Of a stretch of 64,000 nt of DNA, positions 4,678-62,556 are shown in pieces. Source of the stretch: Octopus sinensis (lineage: Eukaryota); contig NC_043010.1 of NCBI RefSeq assembly GCF_006345805.1, positions 15,810,001 through 15,874,000 on the forward strand. Reading direction: 5' to 3'. Numbering within the stretch: the stretch's first letter is position 1; every line of letters begins with the position of its first letter. Below the pieces are notes generated by a model. The model searched no databases, was not told where the DNA came from, and saw only the letters and a program-made list of their open reading frames with translations. Made by a program: the position numbers and the translations under genes.

Positions 4678-4841
4678 TATATACGACGGGCTTCTTTCAG
4701 TTTCCGTCTACCAAATCCACTCACAAGGCTTTAGTCGGCCCGAGGCTATAGTAGAAGACACTTGCCCAAGGTGCCACGCAGTGGGACTGAACCCGGAACC
4801 ATGTGGTTAGTAAACAAGCTACTTACCACACAGCCACTCCT
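4411..4841 (-). mobile_element. tRNA-derived SINE family B with internal (TA)/(TG) tract (copies 8651-9047-, 11167-11562-, 50633-51032+, 54556-54964+, 61977-62352+)
   Basis: Head ggagtggctgtgtggtaag...gggttcagtccc, CORE-like ccttgggcaagtgtctt, tail gaaacaagtaaaagagtaaaagag. Confidence 0.88.
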
Positions 4842-5367
4842 GACACAAAAGAGTAGGGTGTAGGGGTAGTAGACTAGGTAAGTGCAGTAATGGATTACTA
4901 GGGCTCCAAGATTATAGCCGAAATGGCTGTAAATATTAATTCTTTAATTTATTTTTAAACTGTAACCTAATAAATCCCCTAATATTTAATTCTAATCCCT
5001 ACTCCTAAATAATTTAACATTCAACTAATCTCTCCATTCACACTCTACCTACAAGCCCATAACCCCATTGCTAAAAATAACTTTACAGCCACTGACCTTA
5101 GCCAGAATCTACACAAGCATTTACTACTAGATTTCCTCCCCAACCCCTACAGACTAGAAGAATACCTATTTCTTTATTACCCACAAGGGGCTAAACATAG
5201 AGGGGACAAACAAGGACAGACATAGGTATTAATTCGATTACATCGACCCCAGTGCGTAACTGGTACTTATTTAATCGACCCCAAAAGGATGAAAGGCAAA
5301 GTCAACCTCGGCGGAATTGGCACCTACTATTCTCTTTAAATTTCTTTCATTTTGCTCTACTTTGTTT

Positions 5368-8651: not shown

Positions 8652-10199
8652 ACTCTCTTTTACTTGTTTCAGTCATTTGACTGCGGCCATGCTGGAGCAC
8701 CGCCTTTAGTCGAGCCAATCGACCCCAAGACTTATTCTTTGGAAGCCTAGTACTTAGTCTATCGGGCTCTCTTGCCGCTAAGTTACGGGAACGTAAACAC
8801 ACCACCATTGGTTGTCAAGCGATGTTGGGGGCGGGGGGGGGGGGGGTCAAACAAAGACATAAAAACATACACACACACACACACACAGAGCCTTCTTTCA
8901 GTTTCTGTCTACCAAATCCACTCACAAGGCTTTGGTCTGCCCGGGGCTGTAGTAGAAGACACTTGCCCAAGGTGCCACACAGTGGGAATGAACCCAGAAT
9001 CATGTGGTTGGTAAGCAAGCTACTTACCACACAGCCACTCCTGCGCCTATTATTCTGATAAATTTAAATAAACAGTTGTTCCAATGGTTCTATGTCTGAT
9101 GCATCGTAGCTATAATTACAGCAAGCTAGGCTGAGAGAAGTGTTTGTCATGGTCGGAGTGCAACACCACTGGCAGAAAACAAGCTGCTGCTCTTCAAGTA
9201 GCCGTGCGGTACCCTATCAGAATTAACCGTTTATAACTCTACACTTCCATTAGTGAAATTAATGTAATTATGTCAGTATGGTTGCAGGTGTGTAATTACA
9301 TTGGTATCTTTAGCCTTTAGTAAAAACCCGACAAAATAATGACAGCTATAAATAAGAAGGGAAAAAAATATAAAAAACAATATCAGTGCTATATAATTGC
9401 TACTCTCTAGTTTGACTACTTCCTCTCTGTTAAACCTTGTCACAAACTAGTGATAGAGTCAAAGCATAGTCAAGTTTATAGGGCACCAGATTGCTTCTTG
9501 AGTGTATTTTCCCCAGGAGATAGTGAAGTTGGCAAATTCATTAGGAACTCGTCATAATGCTGGCACTTTCAATGGTGTATCTAATGAGTCATTAACATAT
9601 AAACACTGATGAATCTATCTTTGAGTGTATCTAGGATAAGTCATCATGGGCAGAGCCCATCTCACAAGAATATACTTACAAAAAATACTTAACAATTTTG
9701 CATCACAGAAACATCATCATCGTTTAACGTCCGTTTTCCATGCTAGCACGGGTTGGACGGTTTTGACTCAGCGCTGGCAAACCAGATGGCTGCACCAGGA
9801 TCCAGTCTTGATCTGGCAGAGTTTCTACAGCTGGATGCCCTTCCTAACGCCAACCACTCCGAGAGCGTAGTGGCTGCTTTTTACGTGCCACCTGCACCAG
9901 GGCCAGTCAGCCGGTACTGGCAATGACCTCGCTCGAATCTTTTTACACGTGCCACTGGCACAGGTGCCAGTGAAGCGACGTTGGTAACAATAACCTAAAA
10001 GTAATTCAGTTTTAGGGCTTTATCTCCATAAAAATGTAATATAATCACTACATAAGCACTTCTTATAAGTTAAATAGTTGAATTTTAATAAGACATTTTC
10101 CCAATATATTGATATCCATACAAGTTCTTGCATATATTATTGTGTGTGTATGCACGCGCACACGTGTGTATGTGTGTGTGAGAGAAAGAGAGAGAGAAA

Positions 10200-10609: not shown

Positions 10610-11670
10610 ACAGATATCCATACAAGTTCTTGCATATATTATTATTATTATTGTGTGTGTGTGTGTGTATGCTCGTGCATACGTGTGTATGTGTGTGTGA
10701 GAGAGAGAAAGAGAGAGAGAGAGATAGTTTGTTAGTTTGTGAAATTTTCAGCTTCAGTAAAATTCAGTATTTTGCAGTCATGTGCTTGTGTGTGTGTGTG
10801 TGTGTGTATATAATGCAGAAAAGAAGTGGGTATATAAACGTGACATGTTATACACAATGTAATCTACACATAAGAGAATCACAGGCAGACTAACAGAGAA
10901 CTATAGAATCTTCATATGTGATAGATGCTTCTCTATACTCACCCTGAAGAAGGGAAACCTTCTGGACTTTGAAATACTTGATGGCTAGCATCACACATTT
11001 TTTTTCATTTTTTATGTGTGTGTCTATTTTCTATTTCTGCTCTGCTCAACCTTTTCAAGTACTCGCCATGTTGGAACTTCTCTTCCTGTCACATTATCAC
11101 ACTATTCCATTGTTAATTTAGATTTTAACCTGTTCGCAGTTTCTCTTGTTGTTTACCATTTTTCTTTACTCTTCTTTTACTTGTTTCAGTCATTTGACTG
11201 CGGCCATGCTGGAGCACCGCCTTTAATCGAGCAACTCGACCCTGGGACTTATTGTTTTGTAAGCCCAGTACTTATTCTATCGGTCTCTTTTGCTGAACTG
11301 CTAAGTAACGGGGACATAAACACACCAGCATTGGTTGTCAAGCAATGCTAGGGGCATAAACACAGACACACACACAAACACACACACATATATACATATA
11401 TACGACGGGCTTCTTTCAGTTTCCGTCTACCAAATCCACTCACAAGGCATTGGTCGGCCTGGGGCTATAGCAGAAGACACTTGCCCAAGATGCCACGCAG
11501 AGGGATTGAACCCGGAACCATGTGGTTGGTTAGCAAGCTACTTACCACACAGCCACGCCTACGCCTTTAAAACTATTTTTTAACTATTTCTCATTAAATT
11601 TATACTTTTTATTTACGGAGATGTACTTGCATAGCGAATGACTTGATCTGAGATCGTGTGCTGGAACGAA

Positions 11671-22619: not shown

Positions 22620-25600
22620 GTGAGTAATTTTGTGATATCATTGCTGTTATTATCCAAGAGTCAAGCTATTGTAATACCATTGTACCCTATTGTTGTTGGC
22701 ATCCTTTTTGTCTCGGGAGACAATGGAGTTGCGTATAAAATAGTCTAGTCTGGCTTTTACATTTCATGTCCTAACACATTTCCTGCTGTGGCTGTGTAGC
22801 ATTGTACACTATATGTTGACAATAAATTCATTCAAATTATTCCCAGTCTATTTGTTGTCTTTAGGGACATCAGCTTCATGAGCAAACTGGAGAACCTATA
22901 CTTCCGGAATTTTTTAAGGAATGTAACAGATTTTATTCAAATGAATTACAAATTATGGCACTGTCTACTTCAAATTATATTCTACAGGCCAACAGCATCA
23001 CCATCATTATCGATATTATTGTTTTATATTTTTCAGACTATTAACCTCATATTTCCAAAGTTTACATTTTACCAGCGTCATCCTTATTATCAATTTAACA
23101 TTACTAAACTGTTTATCTGTTGGAATATCTTGTTTATTTAAACTGTAGTAATATTACTAGTTAGTTACATTCAGTCATTTGATAGGCTTTCATTTGGGTG
23201 TGTCTCAAGATGTACTCTGTCAAATAGCTTCCAACCCCAATTAGCTAAACTATTTAAAAAAAAAAAATGCATTTCCTAAATACATTGAATAAGAAATATT
23301 TGTGTCTTTAAAACGATGAACTTCCTGACTGGAAATGAGGAATTCTCTTGTTTTAGGCTCCTGAGGACTTTGGTAATTGTGGCTCTCAGCTCATCCTTTG
23401 TGTTGCAGCTTGATTTGTTGGTCTCTCATTCCATTATACCCTACGCAAAGAAGTCAAAGGGTTTGCAGTCAGGCAAGTTGGGAGTCCAAATGTCAAGTGC
23501 TGCATGATCAAAGAAATTCTCCGACAACCAGGCCCGAGTCTTCCAGCTGGTGTGGCAGGGTGCAGAGTCCTGCTGCCACATGTATGGCCTTCTTGCAGCT
23601 TCCCAGTTGATCCAGACTTCACCACCTGGTTCAGAACATAGATGTAGCTGTCGGTGTTCAGTCTGAGGCTCTCAGGAAGAGGTGGGGTGGCATTCACTGC
23701 TGACGACACCAAAGATCATGATTGTCACTGGAAATTTCTTCTGCATGACTCTGGGCATGTCTTTGGGTGAGACAGCAAGCCACCTGTGGTGCTGGGGGTT
23801 GATCTGGTCTTGGCAAAAATTCTTGTTGAAGAAGAACCACAGCATAGCAGGCCCCAGCAGGTGCTTCAACTTGATGATTAGCTTCTTGGTGTGTTTGAGT
23901 CAATTTTACTGCATCACCTTGAACAGAAATGAATATACTTCAAATCCATTAACGAGGATTGACCAGAAGGTAAGTCTGGTGCCAGCAGCCACGGTAATTC
24001 CAGCTCCGGTAGCGTATATTAAAATTGTTGCGTTTGAAAAGCTTGTAGTCAGAATTCGGGTCTCGAAAACGTGCCACAGCATGTTCGGGGTGACGGCGCC
24101 GTCGCGGGCGTGCTTCTCGCGCGTCCACTTTGGTCGTCCGTTTACACTCCCGGCCCTATTCGCTGGTGCGTGCACGGTTGGGCCACGGAGCTCTGCGCAC
24201 ATCGCCGCCGCATCAGCTGTCCTGCCCTGTCTTCGCCTGCGCGTGTCGTCCGGTTTCACGCCTGCACGTCATCACTTCGGTCAGTGCTTTCCTCATCTTG
24301 TATGAATAGTAGCAACATCAGCCTGATGATCTTTTTATCCACACCTTTATCCTGTGCAATGGCATGCATTGACTCGCTGGCATAATTGTTGATGATCTGG
24401 ATCTCATCAATGAATTCCAGCATTCTGATGCTGTCAGATCATTGATCATAACTTTTCCTAGCTGCTTTTGCCTTGTACTTGAACCCTGAATCTTCCAGCT
24501 CCTTTGTCACCTTTTCCACCATCCTTCTGACGTTGAGCTAGTCTGAAATTTCTTTGTTTGTCCTTCTGGTACAGATTCCAAGGAGGAGTCCATGCCTCTT
24601 TCACAAATTGCGGGTTCAAAGTTTTCCACAATCAATTATTCTGACAATAAATAAAGCAAAAATGGTTATTGATTTTAAAAGGAAATTGACCAACGACAAA
24701 AGTAAAGAAAATATGCATAAATTTAGGAGTTCAGTATTGCAAATGAATACCATCCACACTCTGTAGTTATGCCTTGAAGATAAGGGTTCCACCAAAATGA
24801 TTTACTTTTCTCATACACTGTAATAAGGAAGTCTTCAGTAGCTGTATCTCTACAACCTGTTTGCAAATGGAACTCACTACCACTGAATACATTGAGCTTA
24901 GAATAGATCAAGGGTTCATATAACTTGCTCCTCAAACATTTGGGACCAGCCTCATTATACAAAAACTGGTTTTACTTAGGTTATTCTTACTTTACTTTTC
25001 TATTTTTCTTTTTGCAGGAAACCTGGGAAACCTCCTGTACCTGTATGTCCTCCACGCCCAAAAGTTGATGGTGAGACCTCCACTAATCATAGAAGTGTTG
25101 TTGGCCCCGATTCAAGCTTTGATTCTGTTCATTCCACTCATTTACCACCAGATCGCCCTACACCAGTTACTCGCAAGCTTTCCAAACATGGCGCACCCCC
25201 ACAACGCCCAAATGTCCCACCGATAGTGAAAATTTCTTCGACTTTCTTGTCCTCCTCTTCATCATTACCCTCTTCTTCTACTTCCAAAACACCACTTTCA
25301 AGACCGCAGTCAGTAGTGCCAACTGTCAGCAGTCATGAGAACCCTTTACAGTCCAGTGCATCCGTGGATCACTGTACTAAATCACATTGCCCACCACCCA
25401 GGCCCCAGCCTCGTACTTCAATAAGTCACAGTTCCAGTTCCTCTTCAGAGAAACTCACATGTGTTACCCCTCCGAAACCCCAGCCTCGGAAGAGAGTACC
25501 TTCTGCTGCAGTAAATACTCCCCTACCACGTAACAGCTCTAATAATCTGAATGATAATAATAATAATACCAACATTAATAACAATAATAATCTGAATGAT

Positions 25601-37600: not shown

Positions 37601-40600
37601 TAGCTTCGATTAACTGCTGTCTATCTATTAACAACCGAAATTATGACTGTTTTGAAACATTTGAAACTTTTATAATGGAGAATAAAGCAAAAGTTGATGA
37701 TGGTATAATCATTGAGATATCTGAACACTTGAATAAGTTAAATGAAAGTTTTGAAGTTTATTTTCGTAAAGAGATGAATACTATGCAACCGAAAAGATGG
37801 ATTATGAACCCCTTTCAGCCTGACTTTGACGACTGGAATATCAACAAAAGCTGATGAGAAACTTATCGATTTATCTGAAGACTCTTCTTTGAAAATGACT
37901 TTTAACACCCAAAAATTGGTACAGTTCTGGGCGTCCCTTCAAACCTTGTACCCAATCATTTCCACCGAAGCATTAAAAGTACTTCTCCCTTTCACATCAT
38001 CTTATATTTGTGAAGCTGGATTTTCAGCAAGGGTTGGGATTAATGACATGCATAAGATCTGGTCATCAAATCTAAGTAGAGACTTCAACCTTGAAATATT
38101 CAAAGCCACAGTCGAACCAATTCTACTATATGGCTCAGAAACCTGGACGTTATCAAAGAAGCTTGAGAGGCGGTTGGATGGAACCTACACTCGCCTCCTT
38201 ATGAGAACTCAAAATCTCTCGTGGAAGCGCCATCCAACCAAAATGCAAATATATGGGAAACTACCACCTGTGTCATCTCTTGTGAATGGTAGGAGAGTCC
38301 AGTTTGCTGGTCATTGTCGTAGAGCTGAAAAAGAAGTAATTTCTACTCTTCTCCTCTGGAAGCCATCTACTCGCAATACCAGAGGGCGCACACTCTCCTA
38401 CCCTGATGTAATCTCCAGGGATACAGGCATCCAGCAACAGGACCTCCGTAATGCTATGATGGACCATGAAGTCTGGCGTAACATAGTAAATTCCATTGTC
38501 TCGACCACGGTCGAACAATGATGATGATGATGGGATTAAAAGCAAATATCGAAATAAACTGCAGCTCTCAAATTCTTTACGCCTGAAACTATCACGCATT
38601 GAACCCGATGTTAATTCTATTATTGAGCGTAGCAAGAAACAGGCTCATCCTTCTTACAGGCCTCACTGAAGTTGTAATCTGAAATAAATTTGTTAATTTC
38701 ATTAATGTTTTTACTCAGTAGAGTTAAGTGGATCGTCATAAACTGGTGTGATAAATAGTGGGTCACTCAGTAGAGTTAAGTGGGTCGTCATAAACTGGTG
38801 TGATAAATAGTGGGTCACTCAGTAGAGTTAAGTGGGTCGTCATAAACTGGTGTGATAAATAGTGGGTCGCGACTCTAAAAAGTTTGGGAACCACTGGTCT
38901 AATAGCTAAAGGAAGCCTATTACAACTTTGTGTTTTGACATCAACTGCTTAGAGACGATGTTTTACCAGATAAGTGTATCAGTAGCAAAAGGTTTGTTGG
39001 GTTGCAGCATAGTGTTATTGTTAAGTTGGTTTAAAGGGGTTAGGAATATGACATTAGCTCAGTTATAAACAATCTTTGTTAGGACATTTGGATCTTTTCG
39101 GTTTGAACAGCAGTTTTTAACATAATTTCTAGGTAACTAAAAAATTTTAAACTTCGTATACTGGTAGAATGTGTTTATAAAACATCTTTTTCTCTTGGCT
39201 TTATTGAGAAAATTCTATAGTTGTAAGATATTTGTTGTTTTTTTCTTCTTCTTCAATTTCTGCAATTTCAACCAATCAATGACGTCAATTGAGGTAAAAA
39301 AAACATTCTGTGCTGTATGAATATGTTTAAGAAACAGATTGGGTTTATTTACATTTTTGAAGAAAAAAAGATACCCTTCCCCCCACCCCTAAAACAGATT
39401 GAAATGCAATAGATCGATTCTAGGTTCATAATTATGAGTGACAATTTCATATGACACCGCTAGAAAAAACCTGCCATTCAAACCGAAAAGATCCGGACAT
39501 TTCTGTCAATTCACTTTGAAAGAGAACTTAAGGTTAACTAGTTAAGAAAAGTAGTGTGATAATCATATTAATGACATCTGCTAAAATCCTATAGGTAAAC
39601 AGAAATCTAGCATTGCTGACACTGCTAGGATGAAGGTAACAGAACCTTGTGCAGTTGCAGAATTTAATTTTGAAGCTCAAGAACCGGATGAATTATCTCT
39701 AAAGGTAAGTATGTCTTTATTTGTAATAATGATTTCTCGTATTTCTCATTAGACATAAATAATGATGATGATTTTTCATTCTAATTTATTTTAAACTTTT
39801 ATGAAACACAAGTTTTTAAGAATTATAAGGAGAAAAATTGAAACATTTGTCATTCATGCCTTTCTCAGGAAATAAGTAAAACCAACTTATATTGAAATCA
39901 TACTGTAGATGCAGTTTGATAAGTACTTACTATATTTATGATGAGGAGAGATAAAAATGTCCTTTTAATTTTTGACAACTAGGGTAACATACATTTTTAA
40001 ATTAGGGTACAGTAGTAGACAAAATACACAAAACACCAACATAAATAACAAACTTCATAATAATATATAATTTTGAAAATGATTATACAAAAATTATATT
40101 TGTAATAATAAAAATATACTGATAAAAGAATTTGGACAAACAGTCGTACAAAATGGCCAAAGAAGGAAAATAATACTTGGTGACCCTGACAGTGCAGGTG
40201 CCACTTAAAAGCACCCAGTTCACACTGTAAAGTGGTTGGCATTTGGAAGGGCATCAAGCTGTAAAAATCATGTCAAAACTGACCTCGCCTGTGCTAGTGC
40301 CATGTAAAATACACTAAGTCTACTCTGCTAAGTGGCTGGCTTAAAATCAGAGACAGAAATGATTTATCATTGCAGCCCAGGATCAATACCTACCTACAAA
40401 AAGCTACCAGGCCAACATCTTAAAGAACGACAGTAACCCAACATGTCGCACATGTAAACAACAAGCAGAAAGCATTGATCTTATTGTCTCCATGTACAGC
40501 CTTCTTGCACCCACAGAGTATCTCAACAGGCGTGATAGAGAAGTTCAGTATATTCACTGGGTAATCTGTAAGGGCCTGGACCTGCCACATGATAAAAACA

Positions 40601-43600
40601 GGTGGCAATACAAACCACCCTCAATGCTTGAAAATATGATTGCATCCCACTCCTTTGGAACTTTACTGTTCAAACTGACAGAAAGATTGATGCAAATAGG
40701 CCAGACATTATACTGAAGCTTTCAGACAAATACCATGCCTCCTCAGCGCTATGACTGTCCCAATTGACATAAATGTATATGTCAAGACCTACCAAAAACT
40801 GAGCAAGTATAAAGATCTTGAAATAGAAATTGACAAGATGTGAAACCTGAAGGCTAGAACCATACCTGTTGTCATAGGCACCCTTGGGATGATCACAGAT
40901 TGGGATGAATCTTCCCTATCTCAGATACCAGGAAATCCAAAATGGAAGAAATTCAAAAAATAGTGCTCGAGGGAACTGCTCATATCCTAAGAAAAATATT
41001 GTCTATGTAATTCCAAAAATATTTTAATCTGAGAACATTATTGAAAGTACCTTTTACTCTCATCTTAAGATCACACTATCATCTTATCAAATTACTTTTA
41101 AAACAAACTTGACAGACTCTCTCTAGAACAATATTCTGTACAAAACCAAAACTATGGTACCTTAGTCATAATACTGCCTTGAATTTCAAACTTATCTCTT
41201 TAAGTTTCTGGGTGAGACTTGGAGTCAACTTGTACAAATACAAAGCAAAAGTCAAACATATAATAATAATGATGATGATGACGACGACATCCTGATGCAG
41301 TACTTATTTACCCTGATACAGTACCTTTGCTCTGATGCAGTACCAGGCAGTGGCTCTCATGGCTTCTGATCTTAACTGATTGGAAGTGTTATCATGTACA
41401 TTGTTTTGTCTTGGTATAAAAGATGGGCTACAGCAAATATTCTGCTCAATACCACAGATTTGCTTGTCAGTTGTTTGACCATAACCAGTTGAGCATGTCC
41501 TTTAGTGGCTGACGATATGTGCATCTCTGATCACGAGCAGAAGTAGTGGGGGAGCATCATAGTCGTGTGTCGAGGGGGATTCTTTGGGGTTTGAATAATT
41601 CACCTCTGGAAACATGGGTTGTTCTTTCAACATCCTTAAACAACCCTTATTCAGGGACCTTTTGAGCGGGATGGGTTACTCGACCAGAAGAAAATTCTAA
41701 CTGGGCCCCACCTGCAAGGTCATGCGCAGTTTATCTTGATATGAGATCACCATGTCATGCATATATGGTTGTGATGCATGTGCCTGGTGTACCCTTCTCA
41801 GATGGGTAGTCATGATGGGTATACTGGGCTTCATATATTTTACCCCAGTGTCACTTTGATGGCATGCACTGCTCTCTCACTTAATAATGATAATAATAAT
41901 AATAATAATGATCCTTTCTACTATAAGCACAAATCCAGAAATTATAGGGGAGCAGACTAGTTGATTACACCAACCCATGTTTGACTGGTACTTTATCGAT
42001 TCTGAAAGGATGAAAGGCAAAGTTGACCTTTGCAGAAATTGAACTCAGAATATAAAGATGGATGAAAATATGCCAAGCATGTTCTCTGGTTTGCATTTTC
42101 TGCCAGCTTGCCACCTTCATAATCATCATCGTTTAACGTCCGTTCTCCATGCTAGGATGGGTTGGACGGTTCAACCAGGGATCTGGGAAGCCAGAAGGCT
42201 GCACCAAGCTCCAGTCTGATCTGCCAGAGTTTCTACAGCTGGATGCCCTTCCTAATGCCTACCACTCCATGAGTGTAGTGGGTGCTTTTTACATGCCAGG
42301 CGAGGCTGGCAACGGCCACGATCAGATTGGTGCTATTTATGTGCCACGGGCACAGAAGCCAGTCAAGGCCGTGCTGGCATCGGCCACATTCGGATGGTGC
42401 TTTTTACATGCCACCGGCACGGCACCTTAATAGTAATAAGATTTTTAGGATAAAGGTAATGGGAATTTGGTTAATGAATTAGCTGATTGATTAGAGTGTT
42501 AACCCTTCCACCACTATGTGCTCTGCCTAAATCCTAAACGCTTAAACTCCATGTGATCAAGTTTACATTGTTCAATGTGGTGTAATTCATCACAAGAACA
42601 AGGATGTGTCATTAGTTTGCAGTAAATAAGTTCAAATCCTGTTGGCTTGAAGAAGGTAATGGGACGCTACTCAAGCGAACGGCTACAACTGGATGACTGA
42701 ATCTTCTGAAGTACTTAAAAGACCATGAGAATCATTGGACTGTAACTACTAGTTACCTAATATAACAAACTAGAAATTGTTGGATATAATATGCAATATT
42801 GTTGTGTAAATTGTAATATACAGATATGGAATTTTATATTGGCATGTACTATAAAGTATATAAAACTTGAAAAATTTATTTTTAATTTGAAACCTTAAAA
42901 ATTTTCTTTTTAATTTCTGTCTTTAAGATTCTTTAAGTTTTAGCATTTGGTATGCTTCTGTTTCAAACCCTTGCTCATTATCTGATTGCTGCAAAATTCT
43001 TGCATATCAGCAGTGATCATTTCCTGCCAAATTTCTTCTCTTCCTTCATGCTAATTCTTTTACCCCCCCATTTCCAAACTTTGCTTTCTTTTCTATTACT
43101 GAATATACAGAAAGGTGATCGTGTGAGATTACTTACCTGGGTAGATAGCAGTTGGTTATATGGTACCTGTAATGGCTTCAGTGGAATCTTCCCAAAAGGC
43201 TTTGTAAAAATTATTCAGCCACTGTCCAACGTAAGTTATGCATAATAGCTTTGACAAATAAGTTTATTGAGATAAGTGACTGCATTTTAAATGTGACAGA
43301 GTACATTTAACTCACACAAACACTCTCACTCACTCGCTCGCTCACTCACACAAACACACATGCACACACACACAAACATTCACTCACTCTCACATACACA
43401 CACACTCTCTCACATACACACACTCTCACTCACACACACACACACACAAACACTCATTCACTCTCACATACACACACTCACTCACTCACTCTCACTCACT
43501 CACACACACACACACGAACACTCACTCTCACATACACACACTCTCACACTCACTCACTCACTCACACACACTCTCACATACATACACACACACACTCTCA

Positions 43601-49600: not shown

Positions 49601-52600
49601 TTCTCTTCCCTTCTTTCTATGTATGTCTATCTCTCTCTACGTCTACTCGTATCCAGCTGCCTGTTTTATTCTATCATTTGAACCTGGATATTTATTTCCT
49701 TCGTTTTGCTATTAAAGCCTCCAACTCCAGTTAATGCTAACAACAATTCATGTGGAACTGATCCCGATTCAGTGCCAGCCAAAGAAAACTCCAACGATGC
49801 TACCGCTTCTGATGCTACTGAAGTCATGGCCTTCGATAACACCCTCTATGCAAGCCTGTCAGAAGTTACCACTGGCACTATTGCTCCAACTAAACTGGAT
49901 TCTCCTGCTCTGAAGGATCAAGAACAAATTAACTGTGACTTTTTAAGTCCAACTCAGTCACAAATAAATTTCGATGCTCACTCTCAAAACGATGCTTCAA
50001 ACAGCCTTGACGATGAGACAACAGATTCTGAGGTGATCAGCAAAGTTGACTTCCCTGTCGGGGGAGAGGAGACCATAGCCATCACACTGTATGACTTTGA
50101 AGGAGAAGAAGGAGAGCTAAGCTTCAAGGTGAGTAGATGCTGTCATTGGACAGGTACTGCATTTTCAAGGTATGAAGAAAATAAAGTGAAGTGAGAGGCA
50201 ATTCAGAGTAGGTAACAGGTGAGGGCATAAGTAAAAGAACAGGACATTATTGCACAGAAAAGAATGTTATGTAATGACTATCATCGAGTGAGGCTTAATA
50301 GAGAGAATTAGTTGTCAGATGGGAAGAAGGTAGAACAGTTATTACAGGCAATAAAAATCCAAGGTGTTTGCAAATTGGGAGTTTGTGATCTTTTTTTGTT
50401 TTGCTTTGTTTTCTGAAGATATTTCTTGATAAATTAGCTAAGACTGTAGTTGTTATTAATGTAGAATTTTGAGTAAGAGTTCACAGTACATAATGAGCAG
50501 CTTTGCACAATAAGGAAGAAATAAGAGAATGTGTTCAACATTTTGGACAATGATGGAAGGTAAAAAAGAGGATATTATCAGACAAAGTGTGGAACATGAA
50601 AGACTAGTGAGATGTTGGTGGACAGAAATAAAAGGCTGTGTGGTAGGTATCTTGTTTACCAACCACATGGTTCCGGGTTCAGTCCCACTGCGTGGCATCT
50701 TGGGCAAGTGTCTTCTACTATAGCCCCGGGTTGACCAAAGCCTTGTGAGTGGATTTGGTAGACAGAAACTGAAAGAAGCATGTCGTGTATATATTTATAT
50801 ATATATGTGTGTGTGCGTGTATGTTTGTGTGTCTGTGTTTGTCCCCCTAGCATTGCTTGACAACCGATGCTGGTGTGTTTATGTCCCCGTCACTTAGCGG
50901 TTCAGCAAAAGGGACCGATAGAATAAGTACTAGGCTTACAAAGAATAAGTCCCGGGGTCAAGTTGCTCGATTAAAGGCGGTGCTCCAGCATGGTCGCAGT
51001 CAAATGACTGAAACAAGTAAAAGAGAAAAGAAAAGGGAGTGAGCATAGTGTATTGTTGTGTGTTTGTGTTAAAGACAAGAGGAATTGTGGTGTATGGATG
51101 TTAATACTTTGTGTGTGTGTGGATGGTGTATAATTTGTTTGGTGAGAGTATGGTTGTGTGGTTAAGAAGTTCACTTCCAAACCACATGGTTTTGAGTTCA
51201 GTCCTACTGTATGGCACCTTGAGTAAGTGTGTTCTACTCTAACCCCAGCCAACCCAAGCTTTGTGAATGGATTTGGTAGAGAGAAACTGAAAGAAGCCCA
51301 TTATTTGTGGGTGCCTTTGTCTTGACATTTTGCAATAATTGTAATAAGCATCACCATCATATATGTAGTGCTTCTTTGAAAACATAGCCAGGCATAGGGA
51401 AATATTGGCTTCCTTAGATGAGGGTTGGCAACAGGGAAAAGCATCCCTCGATAGAAAAATCTGTTGCAATAAATTCCATCTGACCCGTGCAAGCTTGGAA
51501 ATGTGGATTGGTTATTGATTGGTTGAAATTGGTCAAGATAGTGATAGCTAAAAGCAGAAGGTTTTACAAATATATATATATATATATATATAATAATAAA
51601 TATTAGGGAATAAATCCAAATTTACAGGGAAAAAAAATCAGATTTAGGATTAAATCCAATTTTATAGTAAAATATTATAAAATATTATTAGAGACAAACC
51701 CACTATTTTGCAAAACAAACAAAGGAAAGACTTAATCAATACATAAAATTTTAATAAATAGTCAAAAAAAAAACCGCCACTACAATCGTTTCTTGTCTTG
51801 ATCGACAATCTTCAGGTGGACTTCAATCTAAAAATCAAAATTTTAAAATATAAAAATAATAATTTTAAATAATTAAAGTATAAATGAAAAAATATAAGTA
51901 TATAATCCATATATAACCTATATATAATCCATATCGAAAATATAGACAAATTACCACGAATTCCCTAAAAAAAACCATGATAAAACAAATCTCTTAAAAA
52001 CATATAACGATAAAATCTCCCTTTGCTAAACTCTAAAACAAACCTATATAGTAATCCCCCTAACCTAAACATTCACACACAAATACACACACGTAAACCA
52101 CAGACCCACGACTTATACACATACCTATACTAACTTATAAACCTCAATATACACCAAAACCCACTCCCTCCCCACACAGACAATTAACACATACATCCCA
52201 AAACCTAAATAACAACCCATATACACATTCACACACAAACACACACACACACGCAAAACACGCACACACAACAGATACATATACTCCCTCACATATACGC
52301 ATATACATACTCACTAAACTCGACATATACAACAACTTACACACCCACAAAAATCATTAAATACATTTATGAGCTTAACTCACCTTAGCAGCTCTAACAA
52401 ACAACTTGCAGTAACCCAATCCCATTCTCTATGCCTACCTCACTACTACACACTATTCCATTCACAATTCCAAGCAACGCTAGTCCACCACCCGGTTATT
52501 CACGTGGCAAAACGAACACCACTCAAAAATTATGAATGAAACAATGTAAAAAAATAACCAACATCGAAAATAGACAATTACCACGAATTACCTAAAAAAA

Positions 52601-55600
52601 AAAAACCATGATAAACAAAACTCATAAAAGCATATAACGATAAAATCTCCCTTTGCTAAACCCTATAACAAACTTATATAGCAATCCCCCTAACCTAAAC
52701 ATTCACACACAAATACACACACGTAAACCACAGACCCAAGACTTATACACAAACCTATACTAACTTATAAACCTCAAAATACACCAAAACCCACTCCCTC
52801 CCCACACAGACAAATTAACACATACATCCCAAAACCTAAATAACAAACCCAAATACACATTCACACACAAACACACACACACCACACGCAAAACACACAC
52901 CACAACAGATACATATACTCCCTCACATATACGCATATACATACTCACTAAACTCGATATATACAACAATATTTACACACCCACACTCATACAGATAAAT
53001 AAATTAATTATAAAACTAAAAACTCACAACCATCTCATATACATAAACACTCCTATGAAAACAACATTAAATACATCGTAATTAACCAGAATATCAAAAA
53101 TAACATATGACATAAGGATAAATCAAATACATACTTACAATTCAGTTACAAATTATGAAGTGAAATTAAATTCTTAGCCGTTAAAAAAACCAAACAAAAA
53201 TTACGTTACCATAGAAATAACTTATGTAAAAAAAGAATACGCGCCATAGAAAGTAAACGTCATTCAAAATATGAATGGAGAAATATAATAAATGGAACTA
53301 AAAACTATATCCACGTAGCAAACCAACGCTACTTAAAAAAATTTATTATGAATGGATTCTTTAAAAACTACCATGAAATCATTATATACATTTATGAGCT
53401 TTAGCTCACCCTAGCAGCTCTAACAAACAACTTACAGTAACCCATAACTATTCTCGATGCATACCTCACTACCACACTAATCCATTCACAATTCCAAGCA
53501 ACGCTAGTCCACCACCCGGTTACAATTCCCAACTCCACCCATTCATTCACAATTTAAACGACGTTCCCTTCCACAATGCTACATATAAGCCTCAACATAT
53601 ACACCGGAGATACACTTACACATCCGTGCGGATGGGTGAGAGTATACATTAAGTGTAGTGATGGGGCTCCCATTTCTAAACAATTAGTACCTGTGTGGTA
53701 GTCTCCATGTGTATATTCACGCACGGGTATAAATGCAGGGGGTACACGCTCACTTCATTTGCGTGTACCCCTCACATGTACATATGCATACTATTTTGGC
53801 TCGATATATGCAACAATGTAATCGCGCCCGTGTGTGTGGCATCACTGGTTGTGCAATTCACCCATCTGGGTGTGAGTGGGTGTAAACGTATCGCTGTGGA
53901 GGTCGAGCTTGATACGTATATATTAGTGTGTATTAGGGGTTGTACGTACTAATTATGTGCATGTGCTTCACGCACTTGCGTCCATGTATGGATGAATATA
54001 TTGGGATTACTATGTGGGTGTAAATAGGGTATGGGGGGGAGTTTTGTCATTGTATGGGTGTGGGTTTCATTTGTGATGGTGGTTAGTTGGTGATTATTAG
54101 TATGTTCTGTATATTTGGGTTAGTTATGTATTATTCTAGTGTGTATAATTGTATACATATAATTGGTGTGAATGGGATTACTCCCATTTTTGGGGATGTA
54201 TGTGTTTATTTATCCATGTGGGGCGGGAGTGGCCGTTAGGTGCATATGCTGAGGCTCGTGGTAATTTGTCTATATTTTCGATATGGATTATATATAGGTT
54301 ATATATGGATTATATACTTATATTTTTTCATTTATACTTTAATTATTTAAATTATTATTTTATATTTTAAAATTTTGATTTTTTAGATTGGAAGTCCACC
54401 TGAAGATTGTCGATCAGACAAGAAACGATTGTAGTGGCGGTTTTTTTGACTATTTATTAAAATTTTATGTATTGATTAAGTCTTTCCTTGTTTGTTTTGC
54501 AAAATAGTGGTTTTGTCTCTAATAATATTTTATATATATATATATATATATATACAGGAGTGGCTGTGAGGTAAGTAGCTTGTTTACCAACCACATGGTT
54601 CCGGGTTCAGTCCCACTGCGTGGCACCTTGGGCAAGTGTCTTCTACTATAGCCTCGGGCCGACCAAAGCCTTGTGAGTGAATTTGGTAGACGGAAACTGA
54701 AAGAAGCCTGTCGTATATATGTATATATATATGTGTGCATGTATGTTTGTGTGTCTGTGTTTGTCCCCCCCCCCCCCCAACATCACTTGACAACTGATGC
54801 TGGTGTGTTTACATCCCCATAACTTAGCGGTTCGGCAAAAAAGAGACCGATAAAATAAGTACTGGGCTTACAAAGAATAAGTCCCGTGGTCAAGTTGCTC
54901 GACTAAAAGACGGTGCTCCAGCATGGCCACAGTCAAATGACTGAAACAAGTAAAAGAGTAAGAGTATATAGTGAGTGGTAGGTAGAGGAGGAGTACAGTG
55001 GGAGCAGGTGACAGCCAAGAAGGTTTGAGGAGGAGGAGGAGGAGGTGAAATCGAGATGTTGTTGTAGCGTATTTATTGTTCCTTTACTTTTAGGCTCAGC
55101 AAGAAGTGACAGTTCTAAAGTGGGTCAACAACGATTGGCTTTGGGGAAGGATAGGTGACAAAACCGGAAATCTGCCAGCTAATTTCGTGGACTTTGTTGC
55201 AGACAACAGTTTTGAGGAAAACCTAGAACCCATTGATAACCTAGAACCCATTGAGCCCTTAATGAATCCACCAGCCCCTTCAACTGATACGGTTAGTATA
55301 TTATCTCAGTTTTAATCCTTATTTCTGTATAACTGTGTGTACATGTCAGAACAGCTGCTAAATAAATCATCAGATATAGAATACAGAATTACTCATCAAT
55401 TTGATTAGTTTTAATCCACCACCAAGTCATTTTCTCTCTCTCTCTCTCCCTCTCTCTCTCTCTCTATCTATCTATCTCTCTCCCTCTCTCTATCTCTCTC
55501 TAATTTGTTTTCTGCTTAACTGTGTCACTTTTGGCGTTGTTTGTGTCCAGATGGCCAGGCAAGAATCCATTTCATCTCATTCTTCAGATAAAACATTTAA

Positions 55601-55613: not shown

Positions 55614-56126
55614 GTTCGTTCCTCAAAGACAGTGCTATCATGGTTTGGGCCAGGATAGCTAAAACTAACTAAAACATTAAATATATGTCACTTTCTCAAA
55701 AGTATTAATCTGATGTCAAACAAATTATTGCTACTTTAATTTTAATTAGTATTTTTATATCAAAATGTTACATATCTATCTATCTATATATTATAAATTA
55801 AATTAGAGATAAAACCACTATTAGGCAACTCAAACAGTGATAGACATAAATCAAAACATAAAAAACAAAAAATAAATATAATTAATATATGTAATATATA
55901 TATATAAAATTTTAAATTTAAATTATTTAAATTTTAAATTTTTAAATTAAAAAAAAATTTTTTTTAACTAACCAAAAAGTATAAAAAAGTTATAGAAAAA
56001 TATAAAAGATAATTTTTCAAGCAGATTATTTCTCTAAAGTAGCTATTTAGGATTTAAAATAACTGTTAAATTGGATCAAATAAGGCAACTCCTTTTCTAA
56101 AATCAATATTGGCTGAGAGAGAGAGA

Positions 56127-60780: not shown

Positions 60781-62556
60781 TCTTTGATATTGCTTTTATA
60801 TTATTCCTTTGTTGGCAATGTATCTGGATAGACTGAGGTGACTCAAGTTCAAACCGAGTTTGGTCATTTTATTGCATATTTGGCAAGATAATTCTACACC
60901 GTTTATTTCACCCATCATCCATTGATAGAGAATAAGTTCTGGGGCTTCTGACAATGTTATCTTTGATAGTCTGGCATCCTATATGGAGGAAAAAAAATTC
61001 TCATCTCAAGGAACAACATATTAGTTTACAAAAGACTTGTACAGCTGTGGAGAAATTCAGCTTCGTTAAGCAACCCATGAGTTTTTCCTTTACACTCATA
61101 GCATGCATTTCATTATTTCATTCTACCTGGTTGGAAAAAGGAACAGAATGGGGACACATTCTCGGGCAATATTGCCTATTATGCTCACACTGTCATCTCA
61201 TCGAAGTGTAACATTGTGCTTCACAGTCAATAAACCTGTTGGGTTAATTAAACATCATCTAATCTATTTGGCAAATGAACTTTCTTTTCTCATTATTTAA
61301 TAACTAATCTGTGTCCCTATACAAGTGTGTGGATCTATCTACACATATGTTTCTCTCTTTCTCTTCTTGCTCTCTTTCTCTGTTGGTGGCCTTCTGTCTG
61401 TCTGTCTCTCTTTCTCCACACACACACACACACACACACACATCTTGTTTTAATCATTGGACTACAACCATGCTAGGACATGGCCTTGATGACTGTTTAA
61501 TCAAATGAATGAGCCCCCTTCCCAATTTGATCGACCCCAGTATGCAACTGGTACTTAATTTATGGACCCCGAAAGGATGAAAGGCAAAGTCGACCTCGTT
61601 GGAATTTGAACTCAGAACGTAGCGGCAGAGGAAATGCCGATAAGCATTTCGCCCGGCGTGCTGGCGTTTCTGTCAGCTCGCCGCCTTGCTGATAAGTCTT
61701 TATTACTGACCAATGACATTTCAACCACACCACTGAGTGGTCATTTGTTAGAAAAAGCTACCCTAAAGTGGTTCAAGTTTTTTCGATTAAGCTATTTTCT
61801 TGTAGAGCTCAAACCGGGTTTGTATATTGCTCAAACCGGGTTTGTAAGTTCTGTCTACAAATTGACTTCCTTGTCAATATATGTAAAATTCTTTGTCTGT
61901 CTGTCTGCTCCCTCTGCATTTTCAAATGGCTTGGCCAAATCAAATCAAATTTTACAAGGTAGTAGTATCAGACATAGAAGTGGCTGTGTTGGTAAGTAGC
62001 TTGCTTACCAACCACATGGTTCTGGGTTCAGTCCCACTGCGTGGCACCTTGGGCAAGTGTCTTCTACTGTAGCCTCGGGCCAACCAAAGCCTTGTGAGTG
62101 GATTTGGTAGATGGAAACTGAAAGAAGCCCATCATATATATACATATATGTTTGTGTGTCTGTGTTTGTCCCCCCTAACATCGTTTGACAACCGATGTTG
62201 GTGTGTTTACGTCCCTGTAACTTAGCAGTTCGGCAAAAGAGACCAATAGAATAAGTACTAGGCTTACAAACAATAAGTCCTGGTGTCGATTTGCTCGACT
62301 AAAGGCGGTGCTCCAGCATGGCCACAGTCAAATGACTGAAACAAGTAAAAAAGTGGTTGTGTGTATTTTTTATCTTTTTTCTTTTTCTACCTATTAGAGT
62401 AACTTACCTTTGACTAAAACCGTTGACTAAAAGTCAACGGTTTTTCATAGCATTTGTTGCCATTAATAACCGACGAGAATATATCGTAGCTCTTCGCTCC
62501 GAATTTGTAACTCCGAATACTATAATGACAACTTTTTACTGTTTGTTCTAAATTAT

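What the first reader, a model, noticed from the sequence alone, without database searches (positions are those of the whole stretch)
54396..54437. Sense-strand intronic hammerhead between the two exons of SH3 #2, with a built-in antisense lock
Seen: the + copy is in the host pre-mRNA orientation, ~660 nt upstream of the 55094 acceptor, in the intron that splits SH3 #2. The left arm is transcribed first and is its near-perfect complement. Inference: the nascent RNA can either self-cleave after 54433 or fold into a ~280-bp duplex that blocks the ribozyme. Cleavage could be harmless co-transcriptional intron cutting or could yield transcripts lacking an intact SH3 #2. The duplex would also be an ADAR substrate, and A-to-I editing is extensive in coleoids. 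This would be a TE-derived cleavage/editing switch on an adaptor gene.
Basis: inference. Interest (0 to 1): 0.75.

Follow-up and report, generated by a model that had tools for sequence, protein, structure and literature searches.

The report
Retrotransposon hammerhead motif in an intron
The hammerhead-ribozyme motif and its 280-bp inverted partner are real, but they look like the ordinary footprint of a young, non-coding Penelope-type retrotransposon insertion in an intron of an SH3D19-like gene, and nothing shows a cleavage/editing switch serving the gene.

Summary
Observation confirmed. 54396-54437 (+) carries every conserved hammerhead core base, flanked by helix I (4 bp), helix II (5 bp) and a 2-bp helix III. 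Cleavage is predicted after A54433. A second copy lies on the minus strand at 51777-51819. A structural descriptor finds only these two hits in the window and none in 200 shuffles or 40 Mb of random sequence. No Rfam hammerhead model matches.

The motifs sit in inverted arms, 51672-51959 and 54256-54539. The arms differ by one substitution and seven short indels, and could form a 276-bp RNA duplex (-388 kcal/mol). The plus-strand copy is sense to an SH3D19-like gene, in intron 50129-55093, 657 nt before the 55094 acceptor.

Interpretation only partly supported. The head-to-head copies, 3'-proximal hammerhead, partial tandem, absence of ORFs and (TA)n at both ends match published Penelope-like element (PLE) insertion architecture. 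Helix III is self-complementary on the sense strand only, so two copies are predicted to form a double hammerhead. The monomer fold is disfavoured (P about 1e-5 within the arm), and the transcript carries a single sense copy. The near-identical arms indicate a recent insertion. Pairing of the arms and ADAR editing are plausible but generic. No host function is shown.

The parts
54396..54437 (+). Type-I hammerhead motif, sense to the host gene. Helix I is 54396-54399 with 54434-54437. The core CUGAAGA is 54400-54406. Helix II is 54407-54411 with 54417-54421, with loop GAUCA. GAAA is 54422-54425. Helix III is the pairs A54425-U54432 and C54426-G54431, with loop GAUU. Cleavage is predicted after A54433.
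51777..51819 (-). Second copy of the hammerhead motif, on the opposite strand and therefore antisense in the host pre-mRNA. It is identical except for one extra A in loop 2 (GAUCAA).
54256..54539 (+). Right arm: the 284-bp 3'-terminal unit ('H') of the element, 22% G+C. The hammerhead occupies unit positions 141-182.
51672..51959 (-). Left arm: the same unit in inverted orientation. It differs from the right arm by 1 substitution (opposite 54511) and 7 short indels, 6 of them in single-base runs and 1 in loop 2 of the ribozyme.
51960..53522 (-). Non-coding body of the left copy, with a partial tandem of about 635 bp. 51924-52349 matches 52554-52985 at 92%, and 52351-52498 matches 53376-53522 at 90.6%. 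The upstream unit keeps only the first 36 nt of H and has no hammerhead. The body is TG-rich, and its X units (51960-52349, 52591-52985) have only 3.3% C on the element's sense strand.
53640..54255 (+). Non-coding body of the right copy. It is GT-rich and only 60-67% similar to the left body, with a sharp change to near-identity at 54256.
51570..51603 (.). (AT)n microsatellite on the left side of the composite. About 70 nt (51604-51671) lie between it and the left arm and are found on this side only; I read them as a possible one-sided 'tail'.
54531..54554 (.). (TA)12 microsatellite directly abutting the outer end of the right arm. A SINE copy starts at 54555.
49718..50128 (+). Host exon ending with the first half of SH3 #2 (...IAITLYDFEGEEGELSFK). 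The donor GT is at 50129. The exon start is inferred from an AG acceptor and is approximate.
55094..55291 (+). Host exon carrying the second half of SH3 #2 (AQQEVTVLKWVNNDWLWGRIGDKTGNLPANFVDF...). The acceptor AG is at 55092-55093 and the donor GT at 55292.

Best explanation
This is a young, non-coding composite insertion of a Penelope-like-element (PLE) type retroelement. It is either a non-autonomous relative or a remnant of one. It landed in a (TA)n microsatellite inside the 4,965-nt intron that splits SH3 #2 of an SH3D19-like gene.

Two 5'-truncated copies lie head to head with their 3' ends pointing outward. Each ends in the same 284-bp unit, which carries a type-I hammerhead with a minimal helix III. 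The ribozyme belongs to the element's own biology. Its helix III strand, ACGAUUGU, is self-complementary only at the RNA level and only on the sense strand. Two motifs in the same orientation, as in tandem element transcripts, can therefore form a double hammerhead and cut.

In the host pre-mRNA only one sense motif is present, and its perfect antisense partner is made about 2.3 kb earlier. The most likely fate is that the arms pair into a 276-bp AU-rich duplex, which ADAR then edits like any other intronic inverted repeat. The intron is spliced out, with little or no ribozyme cleavage and no designed effect on the gene.

Shown here: the motif, the repeats, their orientation, the absence of ORFs, the flanking microsatellites, the exon context and the predicted energetics. 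Inferred: the PLE mobilisation mechanism, the need for a dimer, duplex formation and editing in vivo, and the neutrality of the insertion.
For: Motif and chance level. Inverted arms with 1 substitution. No ORF longer than 85 aa in 51500-54700 and nothing protein-like. Partial tandem in the left copy. (TA)n at both ends. A third, older copy at 55792-55863 (-) keeps only the 3'-terminal ~70 nt and also ends on a TA-rich microsatellite, as expected for 5'-truncating reverse transcription. Energetics: the monomer hammerhead fold is -5.1 kcal/mol against an MFE of -6.5. The two-copy cofold gives a double hammerhead with an 8-bp intermolecular helix III at -20.8. The antisense strand cannot form that helix (+0.3). 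The hammerhead fold has P about 1e-5 within the arm, and the arm-arm duplex is -388 kcal/mol with 276 bp. Literature: PLEs carry minimal hammerheads in their terminal repeats. These seem to act as dimers and cleave poorly in vitro (PMC4209133). PLE insertions form partial tandems, often have an inverted 5'-truncated copy and a one-sided tail, and favour (TA)n; non-autonomous derivatives share the 3' ends of autonomous families (PMC8557442). Animal retrozymes are related to PLE terminal repeats and are frequently intronic.
Against: No reverse transcriptase or GIY-YIG gene is present here or was linked to this unit, so the PLE assignment rests on architecture alone. No other genomic copies could be retrieved, so family size, consensus and covariation are unknown. 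The bodies of the two copies are only 60-67% alike while the terminal units are nearly identical, and a single simple insertion event does not explain that. Rfam hammerhead models do not match. Invertebrate hammerheads with a 2-bp helix III can cleave as monomers: mussel about 0.1/min and coral about 0.8/min (PMC7229834). Some cleavage of the pre-mRNA therefore cannot be excluded.
Confidence: 0.72

Rival explanations
1. The sense hammerhead and the antisense arm form a regulatory device for the host gene: the nascent RNA either self-cleaves after 54433 or is locked in a duplex, with ADAR editing tuning the balance and the output of transcripts with an intact SH3 #2.
For: The geometry is right: a sense motif, with its antisense partner upstream in the same intron. 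Conserved intronic hammerheads exist in amniote genes (PMC6155905). Octopus has very high hyper-editing of inverted repeats. Mollusc retrozyme hammerheads can cleave as monomers at about 0.1/min.
Against: The arms differ by one substitution, so the insertion is recent and shows no conservation. The arrangement is explained by the insertion mechanism. The monomer fold is disfavoured and the transcript has a single sense copy. The duplex is about 380 kcal/mol more stable than the ribozyme fold, and 140 nt of the right arm are already transcribed before the motif. Editing would destroy core adenosines. From general knowledge rather than anything tested here: cleavage inside an intron by slow hammerheads is tolerated, because the exons stay tethered to RNA polymerase II.
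Confidence: 0.05
2. A non-autonomous DNA transposon with long (about 284-bp) terminal inverted repeats, inserted at TA. The hammerhead-like sequence would be incidental to the repeat.
For: Near-perfect inverted termini flank a non-coding body, and both flanks are TA-rich. A TA target-site duplication cannot be excluded within (TA)n.
Against: The body is not a deletion derivative of anything with a transposase. The left copy has a head-to-tail partial tandem. A solo copy of only the outer ~70 nt exists at 55792-55863 without a matching second terminus, which fits 5' truncation and not cut-and-paste. A complete hammerhead with a strand-specific self-complementary helix III is unlikely to be incidental.
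Confidence: 0.1
3. The motif is a hammerhead look-alike with no catalytic activity in any context, sitting in an AT-rich repeat of unknown type.
For: No Rfam hammerhead model matches, even at E<=10 on 96 nt. The 10.1-11.1 pair is U-A and helix I has only 4 bp. The predicted fold is not the minimum-energy one, and the z-score against shuffles is about 0. With only two near-identical copies there is no covariation evidence.
Against: The descriptor expectation is below 0.005 per window (0 hits in 40 Mb). All core bases are intact in both copies, and the only difference between them falls in loop 2. The strand-specific G-U-dependent self-complementarity of helix III is a hallmark of dimer-type hammerheads (PMC4209133).
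Confidence: 0.1

Closest known systems
Minimal or atypical type-I hammerheads in the pseudo-LTRs of Penelope-like elements (Cervera & de la Pena 2014, PMC4209133; Craig et al. 2021, PMC8557442)
   Same: A hammerhead lies near the 3' end of a terminal repeat. Helix III is very short, and its extended form is self-complementary, so two copies can make one active dimer. The insertion architecture also matches: head-to-head inverted 5'-truncated copies, a partial tandem, extra sequence at one end only, and a (TA)n target.
   Different: No RT/GIY-YIG open reading frame is present and the body is TG-rich low-complexity DNA. This is at best a non-autonomous relative. The link to an autonomous PLE was not shown.
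Metazoan non-LTR retrozymes (Cervera & de la Pena 2020, PMC7229834; Li et al. 2026 preprint 10.64898/2026.07.22.740005)
   Same: An AT-rich, non-coding unit of about 284 bp carries a type-I hammerhead with a 2-bp helix III capped by a tetraloop, in a mollusc-type genome.
   Different: Retrozymes are head-to-tail arrays with a hammerhead in every unit, so that a monomer can be excised and circularised. Here there is only one hammerhead per orientation, and the upstream tandem unit lacks it.
Conserved intronic hammerheads of amniotes (HH9/HH10 in RECK, CTCL and DTNB; reviewed in PMC6155905)
   Same: A sense-strand type-I hammerhead of retroelement origin inside an intron of a protein-coding gene.
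   Different: Those are conserved across birds and mammals, match Rfam models and are stable as monomers. This one is a recent insertion with no evidence of conservation, and no Rfam model matches.
Intronic inverted-repeat dsRNAs edited by ADAR (inverted Alu pairs; octopus hyper-edited repeats, PMC5625713)
   Same: Two nearly identical inverted repeat copies lie about 2.3 kb apart in one pre-mRNA and are predicted to form a long, near-perfect duplex.
   Different: Nothing differs in kind. The only special point is that the edited region would include a ribozyme core.

Membership tests
Hammerhead ribozyme (type I) | Conserved core: C3 U4 G5 A6 N7 G8 A9, G12 A13 A14, the A15.1-U16.1 pair, and H17 at the cleavage site | tested here: met
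   All are present in both copies; H17 = A54433.
Hammerhead ribozyme (type I) | Three helices around the core, with helix I open | tested here: met
   Helix I has 4 bp, helix II 5 bp and helix III 2 bp with a GAUU loop. The fold is marginal: -5.1 kcal/mol against an MFE of -6.5, and 10.1-11.1 is U-A rather than G-C.
Hammerhead ribozyme (type I) | Match to a curated covariance model (Rfam Hammerhead_1, Hammerhead_3, Hammerhead_II, HH9, HH10) | tested here: not met
   No hammerhead hit at gathering score, at E<=10 on 8 kb or at E<=10 on 96 nt.
Hammerhead ribozyme (type I) | Covariation or conservation of the helices across family members | tested here: inconclusive
   Only two near-identical copies are available, and their sole difference in the motif is 1 nt in loop 2. 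Scans of metagenome and viral collections returned one chance match in a phage contig.
Hammerhead ribozyme (type I) | Site-specific self-cleavage | not testable with these tools
   This needs in vitro transcription of monomer and tandem-dimer constructs.
Penelope-like element (PLE) | An ORF with a PLE-type reverse transcriptase and a GIY-YIG endonuclease | tested here: not met
   The longest ORF in 51500-54700 is 85 aa and of low complexity. Autonomous membership is therefore excluded; only non-autonomous or remnant status is possible.
Penelope-like element (PLE) | Pseudo-LTR or partial-tandem organisation with an adjacent inverted 5'-truncated copy | tested here: met
   Head-to-head copies with 284-bp inverted outer units and a partial tandem of about 635 bp in the left copy. 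This matches the description in PMC8557442.
Penelope-like element (PLE) | A hammerhead motif within the terminal repeat | tested here: met
   The motif lies at unit positions 141-182 of 284 in both arms.
Penelope-like element (PLE) | Insertion bias for (TA)n microsatellites | tested here: met
   (AT)n at 51570-51603 and (TA)12 at 54531-54554 bracket the composite. The third partial copy also ends on a TA/TAGA run. This is suggestive only, because the genome is rich in such repeats.
Metazoan non-LTR retrozyme | Head-to-tail repeats of 170-400 bp, each with a type-I hammerhead | tested here: not met
   There is only one hammerhead per orientation, and the upstream tandem unit keeps only 36 nt of the hammerhead-bearing unit.
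Metazoan non-LTR retrozyme | Expression as a small circular RNA | not testable with these tools
   No transcriptome data are available here.
Domesticated intronic hammerhead (HH9/HH10 type) | Conservation at the orthologous intron across species | not testable with these tools
   No cephalopod genomic orthologue could be fetched; the protein search gave 6 hits and none with the intron. The single substitution between the arms argues for a recent insertion.

The most novel reading that the evidence does not exclude
A recently inserted retroelement hammerhead is already acting on its host gene. The sense motif would cut SH3D19-like pre-mRNA co-transcriptionally, either as a slow monomer or as a trans dimer with other family transcripts. 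The upstream antisense arm and ADAR editing of the duplex would set how often this happens. That would be a natural ribozyme/dsRNA/editing switch caught at birth.
Probability: 0.04. Interest if true: 0.7.

Novelty: new member of a known kind. Interest (0 to 1): 0.2.

Why it matters
It matters little for host biology as it stands. It is one more intronic copy of a hammerhead-bearing retroelement, in a genome already known to be full of inverted repeats and ADAR substrates. It has modest value for annotation. It shows that cephalopod-type genomes hold PLE-style hammerheads that all Rfam models miss, so a structural descriptor is needed to mask or catalogue them. The near-identity of the arms suggests a family that was active recently. 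If such a copy cleaved host pre-mRNA, it would be a tractable natural case of a ribozyme competing with a long-range duplex, but nothing here points that way.

Tried and rejected
- **Rfam.** I searched at three stringencies and found no hammerhead hit. The only gathering-level hit in the window is an unrelated 18S fragment.
- **External copies.** I scanned JGI metagenome contigs and IMG/VR for the pattern CTGAAGATTGTC-N4-8-GACAAGAAAC. Both returned the same GC-rich phage contig, which lacks helices I and III, so I rejected it as a chance match.
- **Orthologous intron.** I tried to reach it through protein homologues. This gave only 6 hits. The closest is a 239-aa Logan fragment on 2.3-2.5-kb contigs that cover the large exon only, so an empty-site test was not possible.
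- **Published sequences.** I looked for mollusc or octopus hammerhead sequences in supplements and none were held.
- **Editing or hypermutation signature.** I tested whether the strongly skewed composition of the element body reflects this. Substitutions between the tandem units and between the arms show no A/G or C/T bias, so I rejected the idea.
- **Palindrome check.** I tested whether the interior is a true palindrome, which could indicate an assembly artefact or a hairpin. It is not: outside the 284-bp arms the two halves are only 60-67% alike.
- **Coding capacity.** I looked for ORFs in the element and found nothing protein-like.
- **Single-strand folding.** Folding the motif alone gave z-scores near 0 and a non-hammerhead minimum-energy structure. 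This is why I then examined the dimer.
Full report
**1. The observation**

The plus strand at 54396-54437 reads CCAC-CUGAAGA-UUGUC-GAUCA-GACAA-GAAA-C-GAUU-G-UA-GUGG. This places every conserved hammerhead core base correctly: C3 U4 G5 A6 N7 G8 A9, G12 A13 A14, the A15.1-U16.1 pair, and H17 = A54433. Around the core are:
- an open helix I of 4 bp (CCAC/GUGG);
- a helix II of 5 bp closed by GAUCA;
- a helix III of only 2 bp (A-U, C-G) closed by GAUU.

A second copy lies on the minus strand at 51777-51819 and differs only by one extra A in loop 2.

I wrote a structural descriptor requiring CUGANGA, a helix II of at least 4 bp, GAAA, at most 12 nt, UH, and a helix I of at least 4 bp.
- It finds exactly these two sites in the window.
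- It finds none in 200 dinucleotide-preserving shuffles.
- It finds none in 40 Mb of first-order Markov sequence with the window's composition, both strands.

The expectation is therefore below about 0.005 per window, and the motif is not a chance feature of this window.

No Rfam hammerhead model matches. This holds at gathering score on the whole window, at E<=10 on 8 kb and at E<=10 on 96 nt. The motif is a variant outside the curated models.

**2. The repeat and the gene**

The two motifs sit in inverted arms, 51672-51959 and 54256-54539. A global alignment shows 280 matches, one substitution (opposite 54511) and seven short indels. Six indels are in single-base runs and one is in loop 2.

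On the plus strand the window encodes an SH3D19-like protein. Its best named relatives are annotated SH3 domain-containing protein 19. SH3 #1 is split between about 39.7 kb and 43.1 kb. SH3 #2 is split at the same codon position:
- The first half ends at 50128, with GT at 50129.
- The second half starts at 55094, after the AG at 55092-55093.
- The joined halves hit Pfam SH3_1 above its cut-off.

The hammerhead is therefore sense, inside the 4,965-nt intron, and ends 657 nt before the acceptor. The antisense arm is transcribed first. All factual parts of the finding are confirmed.

**3. What the thing is**

The 2.9 kb between the two flanking microsatellites has no protein-like ORF.

The left copy is read on the minus strand. 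It is a partial head-to-tail tandem of about 635 bp that ends in the full 284-bp hammerhead unit.
- 51924-52349 matches 52554-52985 at 92%.
- 52351-52498 matches 53376-53522 at 90.6%.
- The upstream tandem unit keeps only the first 36 nt of the hammerhead unit.

The right copy is read on the plus strand. It has a GT-rich body only 60-67% similar to the left body, followed by the same 284-bp unit. The two copies thus lie head to head with their 3' ends outward.

(AT)n at 51570-51603 and (TA)12 at 54531-54554 bracket the composite. About 70 extra bases separate the left arm from its microsatellite; the right arm has none.

A third, older copy at 55792-55863 (-) retains only the 3'-terminal ~70 nt of the unit. 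It has no hammerhead core and also ends on a TA/TAGA run. This is the pattern expected from 5'-truncating reverse transcription.

These features match the published description of Penelope-like element (PLE) insertions: partial tandems that form pseudo-LTRs, an inverted 5'-truncated copy adjacent to the 5' end, a one-sided tail, a (TA)n target preference, hammerheads in the terminal repeats, and non-autonomous derivatives that share 3' ends with autonomous families (PMC8557442; PMC4209133).

Because there is no RT/GIY-YIG gene here, the element can only be a non-autonomous relative or a remnant. It is not a retrozyme in the strict sense either, since there is no tandem pair of hammerheads in one orientation.

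**4. How the ribozyme probably works**

The helix III strand ACGAUUGU pairs with a second copy of itself through six Watson-Crick and two G-U pairs (-5.8 kcal/mol). The complementary strand cannot do this (+0.3). This asymmetry points to function at the RNA level on the sense strand.

| Fold | Energy or probability |
|---|---|
| Monomer hammerhead fold | -5.1 kcal/mol |
| Alternative monomer fold (minimum energy) | -6.5 kcal/mol |
| Two-copy cofold (double hammerhead, 8-bp intermolecular helix III) | -20.8 kcal/mol |
| Hammerhead fold within the 284-nt arm | ensemble probability about 1e-5 |

This is the dimer-type behaviour described for newt, viroid and PLE hammerheads (PMC4209133; PMC6155905). 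PLE minimal hammerheads showed no detectable cleavage as single motifs and low activity as dimers in vitro.

There is a caveat. Invertebrate retrozyme hammerheads with a 2-bp helix III and a tetraloop do cleave as monomers, at about 0.8/min in coral and about 0.1/min in mussel (PMC7229834). Slow monomer cleavage therefore cannot be excluded. Here helix I has only 4 bp and the 10.1-11.1 pair is U-A rather than the usual G-C. From general knowledge of the A9/G10.1 metal site, that should weaken activity.

**5. Fate in the host transcript (inference)**

The pre-mRNA contains one sense motif. Its complement emerges about 2.3 kb earlier, and 140 nt of the right arm are transcribed before the motif itself. 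The arm-arm duplex is predicted at -388 kcal/mol with 276 pairs and only small bulges.

Such long, near-perfect intronic inverted repeats are the main ADAR substrates in animals. Octopus is exceptional both for hyper-editing and for the density of such structures (PMC5625713). Pairing and editing are therefore likely, but they are generic. Editing would convert the essential core adenosines, which are all paired to U in the duplex, and would inactivate the ribozyme rather than tune it.

Intronic copies of hammerhead-bearing repeats are common: about 43% of copies in Xenopus, although depleted relative to intergenic DNA. With one substitution between the arms, the insertion is recent and there is no evolutionary signal of a host role.

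**6. Verdict**

The interpretation as a cleavage/editing switch on the adaptor gene is not supported. The 'built-in antisense lock' is a by-product of how this kind of retroelement inserts.

The most likely reading (about 0.7) is a young, non-coding PLE-type composite insertion whose hammerhead serves, or once served, the element's own transcripts. The rivals and their rough probabilities are:
- a long-TIR DNA transposon, about 0.1;
- an inactive look-alike, about 0.1;

**7. What remains unexplained**

- The terminal units are nearly identical while the bodies of the two copies are only 60-67% alike.
- The left body is very poor in C (3.3% in its X units) on the element's sense strand.
- It is unknown whether an autonomous partner exists in this genome.

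Noticed in passing
window 23872-24020 (+): An Rfam SSU_rRNA_eukarya hit (62.6 bits, E 2.6e-14) covers model positions 21-605 with a large internal gap. It is an 18S-derived fragment inside the gene region, possibly part of a repeat or a pseudogene.
   Followed up: no
window 55792-55863 (-), weakly to 56005: A third, diverged copy of the last ~70 nt of the hammerhead-bearing unit, without the ribozyme core, ends on a TA/TAGA run. It is inverted relative to the right arm. Exon 55094-55291 is therefore flanked by an imperfect 78-93-nt inverted repeat (77-81% match), an arrangement that can favour exon circularisation.
   Followed up: partly
window 51960-52349 and 52591-52985 (-): The repeated 'X' units of the element body are only 3.3% C (45-47% T, 32-33% G) on the element's sense strand. 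The substitutions between the copies show no editing-like bias. The cause of the skew is unexplained.
   Followed up: partly
window 54555-54700+, 4697-4842, 8898-9043, 11416-11560, 50634-50772, 61976-62121: There are at least six copies (92-97% alike) of a tRNA-like SINE, in both orientations, two of them in the same intron as the hammerhead element. They add further inverted-repeat dsRNA potential to this pre-mRNA.
   Followed up: no
window 39594-39705 / 43111-43229 and 49718-50128 / 55094-55291 (+); first two coordinates approximate: Both SH3 domains of the SH3D19-like gene are interrupted by a phase-0 intron at the same position, after ...ELS(L/F)K. This is consistent with duplication of a split SH3 unit.
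   Followed up: partly
window 54438-54447 (+) and 51767-51776 (-): A run of 7 T (right arm) or 10 T (left arm) follows the hammerhead immediately on the element's sense strand. The difference in length is the largest indel between the arms. The run could be a Pol III-type stop or simply a slippage-prone tract.
   Followed up: no
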